Of a stretch of DNA of 64,000 nucleotides, positions 17,550 through 63,471 are shown in pieces (within the stretch, counting starts at the first letter, position 1; every line of letters begins with the position of its first letter). Both the position numbers and the translations under genes were made by a program. The notes below the pieces were generated by a model. It ran no database searches. It saw only the letters and a list, made by a program, of their open reading frames with translations, and was not told the DNA's origin. The DNA lies in the IMG/VR virus record IMGVR_UViG_3300017786_003484, positions 62,001-126,000 of that record; one strand, written 5' to 3'.

Positions 17550-18572
17550 ATGGCAACTTTAGCAGAAATACGAGCTCGTCTAACCGAGCAAGCCGCAAAA
17601 TCGGGCGGTTCAACTCAATCCGGTGATAACGGGCTTTTCGCCCATTGGAACATTCCAGAAGGAACATCCGCAGTAATTCGCTTTCTACCAGACGGCGACG
17701 AATCCAATACATTCTTTTGGAGAGAACGTTTAATGATGCGTTTTGAATTTCCAGGCATTAAAGGCCAGGATGAAAATCGCAAATGCATTGTTCAAGTACC
17801 TTGTGTAGATATGTGGGGAGAGTCATGTCCAATTCATGCTCAATTACGTCCTTGGTTTAATGATCCAAGCATGGAGCAATTGGCTAGGAAATATTGGAAG
17901 AAACGTAGTTACGTTTTTCAAGGACTTATCGTATCTAGTCCAATGGATGAAGAAAATGTTCCAGATAATCCAGTTCGTAGAATGATTATTAGCCCTCAGA
18001 TTTTTACAATCATTAAGAGTGCATTAATGGACGTTGAGATGGAAGAGATCCCAACTGATTACGAACGTGGTACAGACTTCCGTATCAATAAAACCCAAAA
18101 AGGTGGTTATGCTGATTATAGTACCTCATCTTGGGCTCGAAAGGAACGTAGTTTAAACGAGGAAGAACTAGAAGCAGTTTCTAAGCATGGACTGTTTAAC
18201 TTAGATCAGTTTATGCCTAAACGTCCTGGTAAGGAAGAAGTTGATATTCAACTAGAAATGTTTGAAGCGTCAGTAGACGGCAAATTGTATGATCCAGAAC
18301 GTTGGGGCAATTACTATCGCCCTAATGGAGCAACCTTTGCTACTTCTACTTCAGCAACTAATCCAGCTCCGGCTACTCCGGTAGCAACACCTGCACCAGT
18401 AGCAGAAACGGCACCAGCACCCGTTGCAACACCTGAAGAAATGGGAGCAACCCCTTCTCCGGTAGCAGAAGCGGCTCCAGCGGCAGAACCAGCCGAAGCA
18501 TCTGGTGAGAAGAAACCTAGTGTTGACGATATCTTAAGCATGATTCGTAACAGGGAAACTACAGGTCAGTAA
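17550..18572 (+). CDS. gp32: Single-stranded DNA-binding protein, gp32-like
   Basis: MATLAEIRARL, AVIRFLPDGDE, CPIH, KYWKKRSYVFQG, DYERGTDFRINKTQKGGYADYSTS, acidic Pro/Ala tail. Confidence 0.9.
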   Translation: MATLAEIRARLTEQAAKSGGSTQSGDNGLFAHWNIPEGTSAVIRFLPDGDESNTFFWRERLMMRFEFPGIKGQDENRKCIVQVPCVDMWGESCPIHAQLRPWFNDPSMEQLARKYWKKRSYVFQGLIVSSPMDEENVPDNPVRRMIISPQIFTIIKSALMDVEMEEIPTDYERGTDFRINKTQKGGYADYSTSSWARKERSLNEEELEAVSKHGLFNLDQFMPKRPGKEEVDIQLEMFEASVDGKLYDPERWGNYYRPNGATFATSTSATNPAPATPVATPAPVAETAPAPVATPEEMGATPSPVAEAAPAAEPAEASGEKKPSVDDILSMIRNRETTGQ

Positions 18573-59295: not shown

Positions 59296-60156
59296 ATGTC
59301 AAAACGTATCCTAATTATGGGATTACCAGGATCTGGAAAAACAACTTTAGCTGAGAAGTTAAAAACTTATATAGAGGCAGAAGCCGGTATAAGTTCAGCA
59401 CCATTAGATAAACAAATTAGAGTAATTGAATCTCCTAAACTAGACGAATATAAATGTACAGTAGATTGGTTCAACGCAGACGAAATCCGTAAGAAGTTTG
59501 ACGACTGGGATTTTAGTCATACTGGACGCATTAGACAAAGTATTCGTATGTTTGATTTATCTCAAGAATCAGATGCTGATTTTGTTATTTGCGACTTTGT
59601 TGCACCGTTAGTAGAAATGAGAAACAATTTTAAAGCAGATTGGACAATTTGGATTGATACAATTAAAGAAGGTAGATATGAAGATACCAATAAAGCATTT
59701 ATTGAACCTGAGGTATATGACTTCCGTGTACCAGAACAAGATTGTGAAAAATGGGCTAGATATATTTGCGACAGAATTGTAAAAGATGAAAGAAGACCTA
59801 TGTTTGACTGGAGGAAAGAAACAGTACAGATGCTAGGCCGTTGGCAACCATGGCATGATGGACATCGTGCATTATTTGAAAGACTAATTCAACGTACAGG
59901 ACAGGTTGTAATACAAATTAGAGATGTACAAGGATGGGAAGGTTCTAATCCTTTTGAAATTGATCAAGTTAAACGTTTTATTAAAGCAGACTTAGATCCA
60001 TTGTACCAAGGACAATATGAAATTCAGATTGTTCCTAATATTGTACATATTGGCTGGGGTAGAGGTGTAGGTTATACGTCAGGAGAAGAAACCTTTGACG
60101 AATCAGTAACAGAAATTTCTGCAACTAATATTAGAAAAGGAATGGGACTAAAGTAG
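59296..60156 (+). CDS. Adenylylsulfate-kinase-like P-loop domain fused to a HIGH-motif nucleotidyltransferase domain
   Basis: IMGLPGSGKTT, NADEIR, DFS..GR.RQ, ICDFVAP (CysC-like); C-terminal GRWQPWHDGH. Confidence 0.8.
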   Translation: MSKRILIMGLPGSGKTTLAEKLKTYIEAEAGISSAPLDKQIRVIESPKLDEYKCTVDWFNADEIRKKFDDWDFSHTGRIRQSIRMFDLSQESDADFVICDFVAPLVEMRNNFKADWTIWIDTIKEGRYEDTNKAFIEPEVYDFRVPEQDCEKWARYICDRIVKDERRPMFDWRKETVQMLGRWQPWHDGHRALFERLIQRTGQVVIQIRDVQGWEGSNPFEIDQVKRFIKADLDPLYQGQYEIQIVPNIVHIGWGRGVGYTSGEETFDESVTEISATNIRKGMGLK

Positions 60157-60157
60157 A

Positions 60158-60412
60158 CTAACGTCTTTTCTTTTTATTAGAAACTAAGGCGTGTTGTTCT
60201 AGTGCCTCACGTCTTAGTTTTTCTATATCATCTTCTTTTGAAAATTTAGGCTTTTCTCTCATGCTTAATTGAGCATGAAATTTCTTTTTAACTGGTTCAG
60301 GGTCCTCTACGTTTCTTATAAGCATGGTTATGGCTTTGTAGCCGTCGCCCATAAAGATTAATTTATTATCTTTGTATAATAATGTTTTAGAAGAGGTTTC
60401 TTGGTTTATCAT
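60158..60412 (-). CDS. Hypothetical protein
   Basis: Likely start ATG 60412 (MINQETS); the longer track start overlaps the Cys-rich ORF. Confidence 0.6.
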   Translation of the reverse strand: MINQETSSKTLLYKDNKLIFMGDGYKAITMLIRNVEDPEPVKKKFHAQLSMREKPKFSKEDDIEKLRREALEQHALVSNKKKRR

Positions 60413-60419
60413 AAAATTT

Positions 60420-60551
60420 TCATGTACGAATATTGTCATCTTTACACTCGCATTTTTGGCATACATCATTAGGACAAGTTTGACATTCTGGTGAATAGCA
60501 ATGACACCTGCATTTACATTTACTACAATATCTTTCTGGACTACCTGTCAT
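60420..60551 (-). CDS. Metallothionein-like Cys-rich peptide (43 aa; not in ORF track)
   Basis: MTGSPERYCSKCKCRCHCYSPECQTCPNDVCQKCECKDDNIRT: 10 Cys + 1 His; SD GGAGAG; fills the gap in the - strand operon. Confidence 0.75.
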   Translation of the reverse strand: MTGSPERYCSKCKCRCHCYSPECQTCPNDVCQKCECKDDNIRT

Positions 60552-60559
60552 GTACTCTC

Positions 60560-60889
60560 CTACTTTTTGCCTATTGAATTTAAACTATCCATAACATTAT
60601 CGATATTTGGCTCCTTGCTATTTGGATTATACACACATTTATATTGCTTTGGACAATTCTGATCAAACATTAATTCGTAAGTTTTGTTACCGCCTTTGTA
60701 TATACATGCTTGTTGTCCACTTCTTGACTGGATAATCTTTGCTAGTCGGCAGGTTGTCATACTAGGCGGTATTATATCTCCTCTTTGAATCTTTTGTTGA
60801 CGAGTATAATCTTTTTTACTACCATATGTTTTTGCTCCTGCGATTGCAATACTTGGAATCAACAATAACATTACTATATATTTAATCAT
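60560..60889 (-). CDS. Exported small protein with four Cys
   Basis: Signal MIKYIVMLLLIPSIAIA; TCRL...ACIY...CPKQYKC. Confidence 0.7.
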   Translation of the reverse strand: MIKYIVMLLLIPSIAIAGAKTYGSKKDYTRQQKIQRGDIIPPSMTTCRLAKIIQSRSGQQACIYKGGNKTYELMFDQNCPKQYKCVYNPNSKEPNIDNVMDSLNSIGKK

Positions 60890-61106
60890 ATAATTTTACT
60901 CTCTTTGGGTCAATTAAAGAAGGTTCGCATACAGCAGTATATGATCTTCTTTTTGGTACATCTTCACCAGCAGTTCTATTAGGAACTGCTGGTTGTTGAT
61001 TCAATCTACTTGCAAAATATTTGCAATCGTCTATGTTGCGAAAGTACATATCATTGCTAACTATTTGAGTACCTAAGTAAACAGTTAACAAGAATGCATG
61101 AATCAT
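60882..61106 (-). CDS. Small Cys-pair protein
   Basis: MIHAFLLTVYLG...FRNIDDC...AVCEP. Confidence 0.65.
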   Translation of the reverse strand: MIHAFLLTVYLGTQIVSNDMYFRNIDDCKYFASRLNQQPAVPNRTAGEDVPKRRSYTAVCEPSLIDPKRVKLYD

Positions 61107-61573
61107 TATAAGTTTATCACCGCAACAACAAGTATGCCAATGACAACCATAGCAGATAATATAACAAATCCAATTAACTTTAGATTTTCAAGTAGCTCTG
61201 CACTTTCTTTTGCCTTCTTTTTACGTCTAACTAATTCTGCTTCTTTTGCGGCCTGTATTCTATTTGCTCGTTCCTGAATGATACCTGCCCATGTTCCAGG
61301 ACCAAATCTTAAATTAATCATATTTGCTACCTCTTGCATCTGCTCTTGTGCAATTTTAGCATCTATTGTTTCTCTTGCTATATTACTTGTACTAAATTGG
61401 TCTGCTATAGAGATGTTTCCACTTCTTTTGGAATTCATCTGACTATTTCCTTCGAACATTTTGTCAATGGCATCAGCTATATCGCCTATGTCTTTACATG
61501 TTTCTATTTGGTCCTTAATGAATGATACACTCTGTTTGACCAAAGCGATGCCTGCTAGTGTTTCCGCTATCAT
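61106..61573 (-). CDS. Membrane-anchored hypothetical protein
   Basis: ETLAGIALVK N-terminus, FGPGTW, C-terminal TM IGFVILSAMVVIGILVVAVI; TAAATA on - strand at 61631-61636. Confidence 0.7.
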   Translation of the reverse strand: MIAETLAGIALVKQSVSFIKDQIETCKDIGDIADAIDKMFEGNSQMNSKRSGNISIADQFSTSNIARETIDAKIAQEQMQEVANMINLRFGPGTWAGIIQERANRIQAAKEAELVRRKKKAKESAELLENLKLIGFVILSAMVVIGILVVAVINL

Positions 61574-61780
61574 TACAACTCTCCTTTCTATTGAGAAGAG
61601 ACATTTTACAAACTGTCTGGATATTACATGTATTTAACAAAACAGGCCCAATTTTTATACTTTAGGTACGACAATACCTGTTATAAACTTATAAGTATAT
61701 GGTTGGTTAAGCAAACTGGCGAGCAGTTTTGTATTTTAACTAATACTCAAATCCTATAATAGGAAATAAAGGAAAAATCA

Positions 61781-62683
61781 ATGAAGATATTACCCTTAGC
61801 CACGATCGCAGTATTCGTGGGCATCTTTACGGCGAATGCTGGTGAAAAACTAGCACTTCCGTCTACAGAAGGTGTAGACATTACAACATATGGTGAAGTC
61901 CGAGCATATGTTGAAACTTCGACTGTTAATGATGTTGATACAGCAATTAAAACATCAGACAGTAAAATAGGACTAAAATTTAAGACTAAAGAACCAGTAT
62001 ATGTCTTTGGAGAAATGTCAGCTAATGTTGATCTATCCTCAGACGGAGCAGACGATGTAACAACTCGGTTTGGTTATATTGGCGTAGGTACCAATGCATT
62101 GGGAGAAATTTCACTTGGACGTACAATGAGCATTATGGATTCATTTGTTGATAAAGCAGATGTGTTTATGGGTGCAGGAAATCAAGGAGTTCAGAAGACT
62201 CCTTTTACTATGAATAACAGTTTGAAGTATACTGGTAGTTTTAGCGGAGTCGATGTTGGCTTTCAAACACAAATGACTGATGATGCACAAGACCATGACT
62301 TGGATTTATATCAAATTGGTTTAGGCTACAAAGGCATTGGTGTTGCATATGCAAGAGATGAAATTAATTCATCTGACTACTATGGCTTGGGTGTTTCTCA
62401 AAAGTTTGGAAAAATTGGAGCATATGCTAGTGTATCGGTATTAGATGATGATACACAAGCAAATGATGCAGTTGGATATGAACTTGCTGGTTCATATGAT
62501 TTAAACGAAAAACTAACACTACAAGGCGGTTGGCAAGATACTGATGTTACATCAGATGACGGTAACTTGACAATTGAATCACAGTATGAGATTGCAACTC
62601 AATCAGTATTTTTTACTAATATTGATTATGACTTAACAACAGAAGATGCAACTCTTCGAACAGGTCTTAGCTTTACATTCTAA
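61781..62683 (+). CDS. Gram-negative outer-membrane porin
   Basis: Signal peptide, ITTYGEVR, SKIGLK, RFGYIG..T..LGEISLGR, NSLKYTGSFSG, alternating beta strands, C-terminal Phe (LSFTF). Confidence 0.9.
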   Translation: MKILPLATIAVFVGIFTANAGEKLALPSTEGVDITTYGEVRAYVETSTVNDVDTAIKTSDSKIGLKFKTKEPVYVFGEMSANVDLSSDGADDVTTRFGYIGVGTNALGEISLGRTMSIMDSFVDKADVFMGAGNQGVQKTPFTMNNSLKYTGSFSGVDVGFQTQMTDDAQDHDLDLYQIGLGYKGIGVAYARDEINSSDYYGLGVSQKFGKIGAYASVSVLDDDTQANDAVGYELAGSYDLNEKLTLQGGWQDTDVTSDDGNLTIESQYEIATQSVFFTNIDYDLTTEDATLRTGLSFTF

Positions 62684-62748: not shown

Positions 62749-63471
62749 TTGCCACTAATAGAGCAATATCCTAATTATAAATTCTTAGAAACCGTGTTTA
62801 GACTCGGACATCTAGATAAACTCAAAAAAGCATTTTATGACAGCAAGCCAGTATGGAACCAAAGAGCAACAAAAACATTCTTTGCTGATTGCGGCTGGTA
62901 TAAGTATCCTTATTGTTGTTTCGTTCCTGGTTATGAAGAATTAAATGCTCCAAACGTTATTGGTTTACTGCAATCTGAGATATACAATGCAACAGTTAAC
63001 ATTGTTAAAGAACTGTGGGTAGCACTATATAAAGAAACTGACGAAGAATGGATGCCTTTCGGAGCAGAACTTAACTTAGTAAATCCTGGCAGGAAAATTC
63101 AACCTCACACAGATAATCATTTCTATAGCAATTATGCAACTAGATGTCATGTTGTATTAGAAACTAATAGTAATGTAGAATTTACATTTGGAAACAACGA
63201 ATCACCAACATTTAATGTAGGACATTCTTTTATTTTCAACAATAAAAGAAGGCACGAAATATGCAATTTTGGAAGCACAAACAGAGTTCATTTAGTAGTA
63301 GATTTTTTACCCAAGAACATATTTCCTTATACAGAAAGAACTCTTGCTCCGTTTGGTACTGACAACTCGTGTCATATCATTAATACTATACGTTCAAGAG
63401 ATCATCCTTTGCATAATAAATATGTAGACTATGTTGATAATATACCTATACCTAAAAGAAAAACTATATGA
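62749..63471 (+). CDS. Aspartyl/asparaginyl beta-hydroxylase-like 2OG-Fe(II) oxygenase
   Basis: PGRKIQPHTD, RCHVVL.TN, FNNKRRHEI.N.G...RVHLVVD; TTG start with SD GAGGAGG. Confidence 0.8.
   Translation: MPLIEQYPNYKFLETVFRLGHLDKLKKAFYDSKPVWNQRATKTFFADCGWYKYPYCCFVPGYEELNAPNVIGLLQSEIYNATVNIVKELWVALYKETDEEWMPFGAELNLVNPGRKIQPHTDNHFYSNYATRCHVVLETNSNVEFTFGNNESPTFNVGHSFIFNNKRRHEICNFGSTNRVHLVVDFLPKNIFPYTERTLAPFGTDNSCHIINTIRSRDHPLHNKYVDYVDNIPIPKRKTI

What the first reader, a model, noticed from the sequence alone, without database searches (positions are those of the whole stretch)
60420..60551. Unannotated phage metallothionein-like peptide
The 43-aa peptide has spacing CxxCxCxCHC-x4-CxxC-x4-CxxCxC, a strong SD, and sits neatly in a - strand operon of small envelope proteins. 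It has no signal peptide, so the Cys should be reduced and metal-binding. It could buffer Zn, Cu or Cd, or store metal for the many phage metalloenzymes.
Basis: partly seen in the sequence, partly recalled or inferred. Interest (0 to 1): 0.6.

Follow-up and report, generated by a model that had tools for sequence, protein, structure and literature searches.

The report
Phage-specific cysteine/histidine metal-cluster mini-protein
The 43-codon gene is real and belongs to a large, previously unnamed family of tiny proteins found almost only in marine T4-like phages, whose 11 conserved cysteine/histidine positions point to a bound metal cluster, probably zinc, though acting as a metallothionein remains untested.

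Summary
An AGGAG lies 5 nt before the ATG, and there is no hydrophobic N-terminus.

It is a conserved gene, not a chance ORF. I found 205 related loci in IMG/VR, 60 clusters at 50% identity among 1.84 billion proteins (all 37-105 aa), and only 2 hits (both MAG contigs) in 185,579 prokaryote species genomes. In the reading frame pS is 0.84 against pN 0.21; the other two frames show no such gap.

The core is C-x2-C-G-[H/C]-x-C-H-C-x(2-4)-C-x2-C-x-N-D-V-C-x2-C-x-[C/H], which gives 11 ligand positions. Cys and His swap at two of them, and the ligand count is kept even where the spacing changes. This argues strongly for metal, most likely Zn, bound in a cluster. Most members have 9 Cys + 2 His, the same ligand count as cyanobacterial SmtA (Zn4Cys9His2).

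No Pfam, NCBIfam, PHROGs or PDB sequence match exists and no fold match was found. It is therefore metallothionein-like in composition only, not a member of a known metallothionein family.

The gene sits in at least three different genomic contexts and is absent from the same slot in close relatives. A metal-buffering role is plausible but unproven. A structural zinc module that docks on a partner is a serious rival.

The parts
60420..60551 (-). 43-aa Cys/His-rich mini-protein gene, stop codon included
   Evidence: The ORF is. It is single-copy in the 244-kb virus record. Purifying selection is shown.
60444..60533 (-). Conserved core, codons 7-36, holding the 11 predicted metal-ligand positions: C9, C12, C14 (His in most relatives), C16, H17, C18, C23, C26, C31, C34 and C36. 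It also holds the conserved residues R7, N28, D29 and V30.
   Evidence: From alignments A2 and A3, the per-codon table and the ligand-swap counts.
60557..60561 (-). Shine-Dalgarno AGGAG, 5 nt upstream of the ATG and overlapping the TAG stop of the 109-aa gene
   Evidence: An AGGA/GGAG/GAGG core lies within -17..-4 in 48 of 67 distinct homologous ORFs, and 61 of 67 start with ATG.
60158..60439 (-). Downstream 93-aa soluble, basic protein. Its start overlaps the last codons of the peptide gene in another frame.
   Evidence: The same family lies downstream of the peptide in 22 of 63 peptide types. No Pfam, PHROGs or NCBIfam hit.
60560..60889 (-). Upstream 109-aa protein with a signal-like N-terminus and 4 Cys
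   Evidence: There are 44 related viral loci. It lies upstream of the peptide in 19 of 63 types.
60882..61106 (-). 74-aa protein with a weakly hydrophobic N-terminus and 2 Cys
   Evidence: In relatives this family usually lies downstream of the 93-aa gene.
61106..61573 (-). 155-aa protein with a C-terminal transmembrane segment; first gene of the - strand module
   Evidence: Kyte-Doolittle 3.03 at residues 135-153. There are 29 related viral loci. Metatranscriptome contigs start about 40 nt upstream of it.

Best explanation
The gene encodes a stand-alone cytoplasmic mini-protein of about 4.8 kDa. It has no room for a hydrophobic core and most likely folds around a compact metal-thiolate/imidazole cluster built from 11 conserved Cys/His ligands in about 28 residues. 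Zn(II) is the most likely metal. I infer 3-4 ions per chain, with some bridging thiolates as in metallothionein domains. Cd(II), Co(II) or Cu(I) are possible alternatives.

It belongs to a virus-specific family spread through several lineages of marine T4-like phages as a mobile accessory gene.

Shown here: the gene is real, is under purifying selection, has conserved and interchangeable Cys/His ligands, is restricted to viruses, and matches no known family.

Inferred: metal binding, the metal's identity and the stoichiometry.

My preferred physiological reading, held at modest confidence, is metallothionein-like. During infection the protein would capture and hold scarce Zn (or a similar metal) in the host cytoplasm. 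It could then hand the metal to phage metalloproteins or withhold it from host systems.
For: The ORF and its Shine-Dalgarno sequence are confirmed.

The family is large: 39 clusters by word search, 60 clusters at 50% identity among 1.84 billion representatives, all 37-105 aa and none fused to a larger domain, and 205 loci in IMG/VR. Only 2 hits, both MAG contigs, were found in one genome from each of 185,579 prokaryote species.

Selection acts on the reading frame: pS 0.84 against pN 0.21, compared with 0.29/0.33 and 0.27/0.34 in the shifted frames. Every ligand Cys uses both TGT and TGC.

Nine Cys and H17 are invariant in 83 sequences. Position 14 is His in 136 sequences and Cys in 27. The last ligand is Cys in 159 and His in 4. 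Cys/His exchange is typical of Zn ligands.

Variants that delete the N-D-V segment, or that insert 13-15 residues, still keep five Cys in the second half.

The majority ligand set of 9 Cys + 2 His equals that of SmtA's Zn4Cys9His2 core (PMC10119931).

No signal peptide or transmembrane segment is present.

AlphaFold2 finds almost no secondary structure. Its confidence rises from 57.5 to 68.8 with a deeper alignment, as expected for a fold that depends on metal.

In more distant relatives, the slot after the 109-aa gene holds a different small 4-Cys protein, DUF1289.

The operon, including 113 of the ORF's 132 nt, is present at 100% identity in metatranscriptome contigs, while the flanks are not covered.
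Against: There is no experimental or computed metal stoichiometry.

There is no sequence match to any metallothionein family or to any PDB metallothionein, and no fold match.

Non-ligand residues (N28, D29, V30, and G13 in most members) are nearly invariant. Many clades also carry conserved C-terminal motifs: IPxSF in 43 of 163 sequences and DARxW in 12 of 163. Both features suggest a defined fold that docks on a partner rather than a simple metal sponge.

The gene is missing from the same slot in close relatives (L033, L034, L038, L041-L046), so it is dispensable.

No metal transporter, sensor or other metal-homeostasis gene is a consistent neighbour.

The RNA evidence comes from assembled contigs only. 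It gives no strand information, and DNA carry-over is possible.
Confidence: 0.5

Rival explanations
1. It is a structural zinc-cluster module that works by binding a macromolecule, not by handling metal. The metal only holds the 28-residue knot in shape. The variable C-terminal tail and the surface residues would dock on a host or phage protein, or on nucleic acid, for example as an inhibitor, an adaptor or a regulator of host takeover.
For: The fixed ligand spacing includes three C-x2-C knuckles, one followed by Gly. N28, D29 and V30 are nearly invariant. Recurrent C-terminal linear motifs (IPxSF, DARxW) occur in sequence-divergent clades. It is single-copy in this phage. It behaves as an accessory gene that moves between hypervariable regions full of small host-takeover-type ORFs. 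The nearest named clusters by language-model features are small zinc-finger proteins, but only at chance-level scores.
Against: Eleven ligands in 28 residues is far denser than in ordinary zinc fingers and leaves very little surface that is not ligand. The window's own clade lacks the tail motifs; its tail is constrained by overlap with the next gene instead. There is no conserved partner gene across contexts. No partner is identified and no fold match exists.
Confidence: 0.33
2. It is an iron-sulfur or redox-active mini-protein. The Cys/His set would bind a [4Fe-4S] or [2Fe-2S] cluster, or cycle between thiol and disulfide, acting as a small electron carrier or redox sensor.
For: The Cys density is high. 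Cys/His ligand swaps also occur in some Fe-S proteins. A DUF1289 protein, a 4-Cys family, occupies the equivalent slot in distant relatives. One cyanophage-like context has a plastocyanin-type copper protein immediately upstream.
Against: There is no ferredoxin-type C-x2-C-x2-C-x3-C-P motif and no Pfam Fer4, HiPIP or rubredoxin hit for any of 40 members. Eleven conserved ligands are more than one Fe-S cluster needs. No Fe-S assembly or redox partner gene is a consistent neighbour.
Confidence: 0.08
3. It is a precursor of a ribosomally made, modified peptide (SCIFF/ranthipeptide-like or lanthipeptide-like), or an exported disulfide-rich peptide.
For: It is a small Cys-rich ORF. Its size and Cys count resemble 'six cysteines in forty-five residues' precursors; I draw this resemblance from memory and did not test it as homology.
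Against: There is no NCBIfam or Pfam hit. Only 4-10 residues precede the first Cys, so there is no leader. No signal peptide is present. No radical-SAM or other maturase appears among the Pfam-annotated genes within +/-5 kb in four different contexts. Invariant His and Cys/His swaps fit metal ligation, not thioether formation.
Confidence: 0.03
4. It is not a gene: a chance or antisense ORF.
For: The ORF is very short. Another frame with 10 Cys in 30 aa exists in the window as an antisense artefact.
Against: There are hundreds of homologues with saturated synonymous change but conserved protein sequence. Start codons and Shine-Dalgarno sequences are conserved. No frame in 100 shuffles reaches this Cys density.
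Confidence: 0.01

Closest known systems
Bacterial metallothionein SmtA/BmtA (Pfam PF02069; PDB 1JJD)
   Same: Both are small cytoplasmic proteins that use Cys and His as ligands. The majority form of the phage family has 9 Cys + 2 His, the same ligand count as SmtA's Zn4Cys9His2 core (PMC10119931). Both occur in marine settings where BmtA is thought to manage scarce Zn or Cd (PMC3323870).
   Different: There is no detectable sequence similarity: Pfam hmmscan of 40 members at E<=10 and a profile search of PDB sequences at E<=10 both fail to find it. The ligand spacing is different. The core is shorter (28 against about 50 residues). The SmtA zinc-finger fold elements are not predicted. The family is found in phages, not in cells.
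Animal metallothionein alpha and beta domains (M4Cys11 and M3Cys9 clusters; my own knowledge of the family)
   Same: The ligand density, 11 in about 28-30 residues, is comparable. Both use C-x-C and C-x2-C motifs, lack a hydrophobic core, and have little predicted secondary structure.
   Different: The phage family has an invariant His, a Tyr in most members and the nearly invariant N-D-V triplet. There is no sequence match. It is a single domain only.
Zn3Cys9-type cluster modules inside larger proteins (CXC / pre-SET domains; my own knowledge)
   Same: Both pack many Cys into a short stretch that forms a polynuclear Zn cluster with a purely structural role. This is the model for the rival explanation.
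   Different: Those are domains of large eukaryotic chromatin proteins. Here the module stands alone, and no Pfam match to them was found.
Pelagibacter phage HTVC008M gp049 (YP_007517915.1, 40 aa, hypothetical protein)
   Same: This is the only cultured-phage candidate I found. It starts with C-x2-C-G-H and ends with C-x2-C-x-C-x2-C. It lies about 1.4 kb from that phage's porin gene, much as the window's gene lies near a porin gene.
   Different: The match is weak (E 0.034, 11.6 bits). It has 7 Cys + 3 His, lacks C16 and the N-D-V segment, and has a long non-Cys middle part. Homology is unproven.
DUF1289 (PF06945) small 4-Cys proteins
   Same: In more distant relatives of this module, a DUF1289 gene occupies the same position, immediately after the 109-aa gene. 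Both are small, cytoplasmic and Cys-rich.
   Different: It is a different family with a different Cys pattern. The window peptide does not match PF06945.

Membership tests
Metallothionein (operational class, not one homologous family) | Low molecular mass (<10 kDa) and very high Cys content with C-x-C / C-x2-C motifs | tested here: met
   The protein is 43 aa with 10 Cys (23%), or 10 of 28 residues (36%) in the core. Motifs are confirmed.
Metallothionein (operational class, not one homologous family) | Binds several metal ions per chain in metal-thiolate clusters | not testable with these tools
   This is only inferred, from 11 conserved ligand positions and Cys/His swaps. It needs ESI-MS, ICP-MS or 113Cd NMR.
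Metallothionein (operational class, not one homologous family) | Physiological role in metal buffering, storage or detoxification | not testable with these tools
   No metal-homeostasis gene is a consistent neighbour. There are no expression data against metal concentration.
BmtA/SmtA bacterial metallothionein (PF02069) | Significant match to the family profile or to the SmtA sequence | tested here: not met
   There are no Pfam hits for the window peptide or for any of the 40 members at E<=10. The A2 profile does not find 1JJD or any other metallothionein chain in the PDB at E<=10.
BmtA/SmtA bacterial metallothionein (PF02069) | Zinc-finger (treble-clef-like) fold with a hairpin and a helix around site A | tested here: inconclusive
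   The AlphaFold2 model has pLDDT 68.8 and only a 4-residue helix. Foldseek and VIA-align find no match. A model built without metal is unreliable.
BmtA/SmtA bacterial metallothionein (PF02069) | Ligand set Cys9His2 | tested here: met
   The majority of the family has 9 Cys + 2 His (136 of 163). The window's clade has 10 Cys + 1 His. Only the count matches, not the arrangement.
Eukaryotic metallothionein families (Pfam Metallothio and related models) | Match to any of the Pfam metallothionein profiles | tested here: not met
SCIFF / ranthipeptide-type RiPP precursors | Match to the NCBIfam/TIGRFAM precursor model, and a radical-SAM maturase encoded nearby | tested here: not met
   There is no NCBIfam hit. 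No Radical_SAM gene appears among the Pfam-annotated neighbours in four contexts.
Ferredoxin-type Fe-S proteins | C-x2-C-x2-C-x3-C-P motif or a Pfam Fer4-type match | tested here: not met
   The motif is absent from the alignment. There is no Pfam hit.
DUF1289 (PF06945) | Match to PF06945 | tested here: not met
   The window peptide has no hit. The small ORF in the same slot in L053 and L058 does match, at E 3e-9 and 1e-10.

The most novel reading that the evidence does not exclude
This would be the first virus-encoded metallothionein family. Marine T4-like phages would carry a mobile 40-50-aa gene whose product assembles a Zn4(Cys9His2)-type cluster, convergent with cyanobacterial SmtA. The phage would use it to take over the host cell's trace-metal economy (Zn, Cd, Co or Cu) during infection. 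That would make it a trace-metal auxiliary metabolic gene in waters where free Zn is picomolar.
Probability: 0.3. Interest if true: 0.75.

Novelty: new variant of a known kind. Interest (0 to 1): 0.55.

Why it matters
Phage auxiliary genes for phosphate, carbon, nitrogen and sulfur metabolism are well known. My library searches found no described phage-encoded metallothionein or comparable trace-metal-holding protein.

This family is abundant. I found 205 IMG/VR loci, and near-identical copies of this very locus occur in marine and seawater metagenomes from at least a dozen studies. It is restricted to viruses. It is also small enough to synthesise chemically, so metal stoichiometry and affinity can be measured directly.

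If it handles metal, it adds trace-metal control to the ways ocean phages reprogramme their hosts. If it is instead a zinc-knot adaptor, it is a new minimal fold and a handle on an unknown host-takeover step. Either way it gives a name and a testable hypothesis to a widespread 'hypothetical' small ORF that most pipelines overlook.

Tried and rejected
1. megablast and tblastn of the locus, the peptide and its neighbours against 50,697 deposited phage records found no matches. A cyanophage-like relative (P0033) gave only chance hits at E>=0.3, and the Cys core was evidently masked by the low-complexity filter. Absence from cultured phages is therefore not proven by BLAST. PHROGs also has no family for it.

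2. A profile search of three cultured phage genomes found nothing in C48C1 or S-T4, and only a weak hit in HTVC008M.

3. Pfam, NCBIfam and PHROGs scans of the peptide and its four operon neighbours found nothing informative.

4. AlphaFold2 was run twice. The 40-sequence alignment gave pLDDT 57.5 and the 83-sequence alignment gave 68.8. Foldseek against the PDB and VIA-align against 48,161 chains found no match.

5. ESM Atlas look-alikes returned only the protein's own unnamed clusters. The named ones were at chance level.

6. The sigma-70 promoter scan was not above shuffles. No T4 late-promoter motif (TATAAATA) lies near the operon.

7. An apparent fusion of the domain to a two-helix membrane protein (P0100) turned out to be a gene call that reads through a TAG stop. 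It is two adjacent genes, not a fusion.

8. Complex prediction was not used. I do not claim a specific binding pair, and no neighbour is conserved across contexts.

9. The idea that the N-terminus is a RiPP leader was rejected, because it is only 4-10 residues long.

Full report
**1. Observation**

window:60420-60551 on the - strand is an ATG-started ORF of 43 codons.

An AGGAG lies at 60557-60561, 5 nt before the ATG, and overlaps the TAG stop of the upstream gene. The protein has no hydrophobic stretch; the best Kyte-Doolittle score over a 19-residue window is -0.60.

In 100 shuffles of the window, no reading frame reached 10 Cys in 30 residues. The real window has two such frames. The second (18354-18533, - strand) is antisense to a long + strand ORF and is noise.

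**2. Where the window comes from**

The window is bases 62001-126000 of a 244-kb IMG/VR virus record estimated to be 74% complete. It encodes a tail sheath, large terminase, UvsW-like and gp41-like helicases and ribonucleotide reductase.

Its terminase is 48-49% identical to those of jumbo phages such as PA5oct and Phosso. GC content is about 35%. It is therefore an uncultured marine T4-like jumbo phage.

Near-identical copies of the 1.6-kb stretch around the gene occur in marine, seawater and viral metagenomes from at least a dozen studies.

**3. The gene is real and conserved**

- Related viral contigs found through the neighbouring 109-aa gene carry a homologous small ORF in the same place.
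- A word search with an alignment of these ORFs found 39 clusters.
- An exhaustive profile search of 1.84 billion representative proteins found 60 clusters at 50% identity. All are 37-105 aa and none is fused to a larger domain.
- A pattern scan of IMG/VR found 205 loci.
- The same scan over one genome from each of 185,579 prokaryote species found two hits. Both are on MAG contigs and are most simply explained as binned phage DNA.

Over 63 distinct core nucleotide sequences, the proportion of synonymous differences is 0.84, which is saturated. The non-synonymous proportion is 0.21. In the two shifted frames the figures are 0.29/0.33 and 0.27/0.34.

Every conserved Cys uses both TGT and TGC, and R7 uses five different Arg codons. 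That set was selected with a Cys-containing pattern, so its Cys invariance is partly circular. The profile-selected sets do not have this problem and show the same thing.

An AGGA/GGAG/GAGG core precedes 48 of 67 distinct ORFs, and 61 of 67 start with ATG.

Metatranscriptome contigs from one study cover 60439-61613 at 100% identity but not the flanking intergenic region or the convergent gene. Three other RNA libraries hold parts of the operon. This is weak support for transcription: the data are contigs, give no strand, and DNA carry-over is possible.

**4. Anatomy of the family**

The core is C-x2-C-G-[H/C]-x-C-H-C-x(2-4)-C-x2-C-x-N-D-V-C-x2-C-x-[C/H].

In 83 aligned members, C9, C12, C16, H17, C18, C23, C26, C31 and C34 are invariant. 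N28, D29 and C36 are conserved in at least 90%.

Among 163 sequences with the standard spacing, position 14 is His in 136 and Cys in 27, including the window's clade. The last ligand is Cys in 159 and His in 4.

Eight sequences lack the N-D-V segment and three have a 13-15-residue insertion after C23. All of them still carry five Cys in the second half.

So 11 ligand positions are kept, and Cys and His are interchangeable at two of them. This is the behaviour expected of metal ligands, especially Zn ligands.

Eleven ligands in about 28 residues leave no room for a hydrophobic core. AlphaFold2 predicts almost no secondary structure, and its confidence rose only from 57.5 to 68.8 with a deeper alignment. 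Foldseek and VIA-align find no similar solved structure.

**5. Genomic context**

In the window the gene is the fourth of five tightly packed - strand genes.

| Gene | Coordinates (- strand) | Features |
|---|---|---|
| 155 aa | 61106-61573 | C-terminal membrane anchor |
| 74 aa | 60882-61106 | weakly hydrophobic N-terminus, 2 Cys |
| 109 aa | 60560-60889 | signal-like N-terminus, 4 Cys |
| 43 aa (the peptide) | 60420-60551 | no hydrophobic stretch, 10 Cys |
| 93 aa | 60158-60439 | soluble, basic |

The last codons of the peptide gene overlap the start of the 93-aa gene in another frame. This explains why the D-D-I-Q-T-type tail is conserved in this clade.

Across 63 peptide types, these four neighbour families each accompany the peptide in only 19-22 types.

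Close relatives have the 109-aa and 93-aa genes directly adjacent, with no peptide between them (L033, L034, L038, L041-L046).

Other members lie in cyanophage-like or pelagiphage-like T4 genomes:
- between hsp20 and uvsX;
- immediately after a plastocyanin-type copper-protein gene and before a lysozyme gene;
- beside a lipase gene.

The gene is therefore a mobile accessory gene whose function does not depend on the 'envelope' operon.

In more distant versions of the module, the slot after the 109-aa gene holds a DUF1289 protein, another small 4-Cys protein.

**6. Comparison with known families**

Pfam, NCBIfam and PHROGs give no hit for the peptide. Pfam gives none for any of 40 members at E<=10, metallothionein families included.

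A profile search of all PDB sequences at E<=10 returns only two chance hits. It finds no metallothionein, including SmtA.

The family is therefore not a member of the BmtA/SmtA family or of any eukaryotic metallothionein family.

It does meet the operational, compositional definition of a metallothionein (PMC3323870). The majority ligand set, 9 Cys + 2 His, equals that of SmtA's Zn4Cys9His2 core (PMC10119931). That match is a lead on stoichiometry, not a test.

Among cultured phages I found only a weak candidate relative, HTVC008M gp049 (E 0.034). BLAST searches of deposited phage records are unreliable here, because the Cys core is masked.

Literature searches found no description of a phage metallothionein or of this family.

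**7. Interpretation**

I consider metal binding by a compact Cys/His cluster very likely, at about 0.8. Zn is the most likely metal.

What the protein does with the metal is open.

The metallothionein-like reading is capture, holding and perhaps donation or withholding of scarce metal during infection.

The main rival is a structural zinc knot that docks on a partner. It fits the nearly invariant non-ligand residues and the recurrent C-terminal motifs: IPxSF in 43 and DARxW in 12 of 163 sequences.

The remaining readings have little or no support:
- An Fe-S or redox role, because there is no ferredoxin-type motif or Fe-S family hit.
- A RiPP precursor or exported peptide, because there is no leader, signal peptide or maturase.
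- A chance ORF, because of the family's size and selection pattern.

**8. Verdict**

The family is new to the libraries I could search, virus-specific and abundant. I class it as a new variant of a known kind, the small metal-cluster or metallothionein-like proteins. It has moderate to good interest, and the biochemistry needed to test it is cheap and decisive.

Noticed in passing
window 61781-62683 (+): The phage encodes a Gram-negative porin (Pfam Porin_4, E 8.7e-20) with a signal peptide, divergent from the small-gene module. Pelagibacter phage HTVC008M also has an annotated outer-membrane porin (gp042) about 1.4 kb from its weak relative of the Cys-rich peptide.
   Followed up: partly
L053:1275-1385, L056:1051-1167, L057:741-854, L062:994-1104 (also L051, L055, L058, L068, L071, L072): There is a second family of Cys-rich mini-proteins of about 37 aa. 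Its pattern is C-x2-C-x-C-Y-x-C-x-C-x2-C-x-C-x-C-H with an acidic tail that often ends VQGVPV. It lies about 750 nt upstream of the 109-aa gene homologue in more distant phage contigs. It has no Pfam hit. hhalign against the main family gives 81.5% probability over 20 columns, which may be distant kinship or Cys-driven bias.
   Followed up: partly
L053:2329-2481, L058:1562-1699 and the same slot in L051, L054, L056, L057, L061, L062, L068, L071, L073: In distant relatives of the module, the position directly after the 109-aa gene is occupied by a DUF1289 (PF06945) 4-Cys small protein instead of the family studied here. Two unrelated small Cys proteins therefore occupy the same slot.
   Followed up: partly
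L050:5502-5609, L054:5469-5573, L059:3269-3409: These small ORFs end in a C-x-C-x-C-x-C motif after a basic helical-looking part, and lie a little downstream in the same module of distant relatives. I did not check their conservation or coding status.
   Followed up: no
L168:1522-1644 (NC_020484.1 30276-30398): HTVC008M gp049 is a 40-aa hypothetical protein that begins C-x2-C-G-H and ends C-x2-C-x-C-x2-C. It is the only candidate relative in a cultured phage (E 0.034 with the family profile).
   Followed up: partly
L170:172-441: The database protein P0100 looks like a fusion of a two-helix membrane protein to the Cys-rich domain. It translates only if a TAG is read as Gln. It is really two adjacent genes. 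The same small membrane-protein family lies within about 1.5 kb in 11 of 63 peptide types.
   Followed up: yes
window 59296-60156 (+): A 286-aa protein has an N-terminal P-loop kinase part (APS_kinase/KTI12-like) and a C-terminal cytidylyltransferase-like part. It matches phrog_10255 'kinase' at E 8e-43 and is convergent with the small-gene module.
   Followed up: no
window 62749-63471 (+): An Asp/Asn beta-hydroxylase-type 2OG-Fe(II) oxygenase (PF05118, E 3e-13) lies next to the porin gene.
   Followed up: no
L082/L083:4483-5150: In a cyanophage-like T4 contig, the family member lies 90 nt downstream of a plastocyanin-type copper-protein gene (PF00127) and near hsp20. This is one context only, so it is at most a hint of a copper link.
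   Followed up: no
window 18354-18533 (-): A stop-free frame with 10 Cys in 30 aa lies antisense to the 340-aa + strand ORF at 17550-18572. I treated it as a by-product of that gene's codon content.
   Followed up: partly
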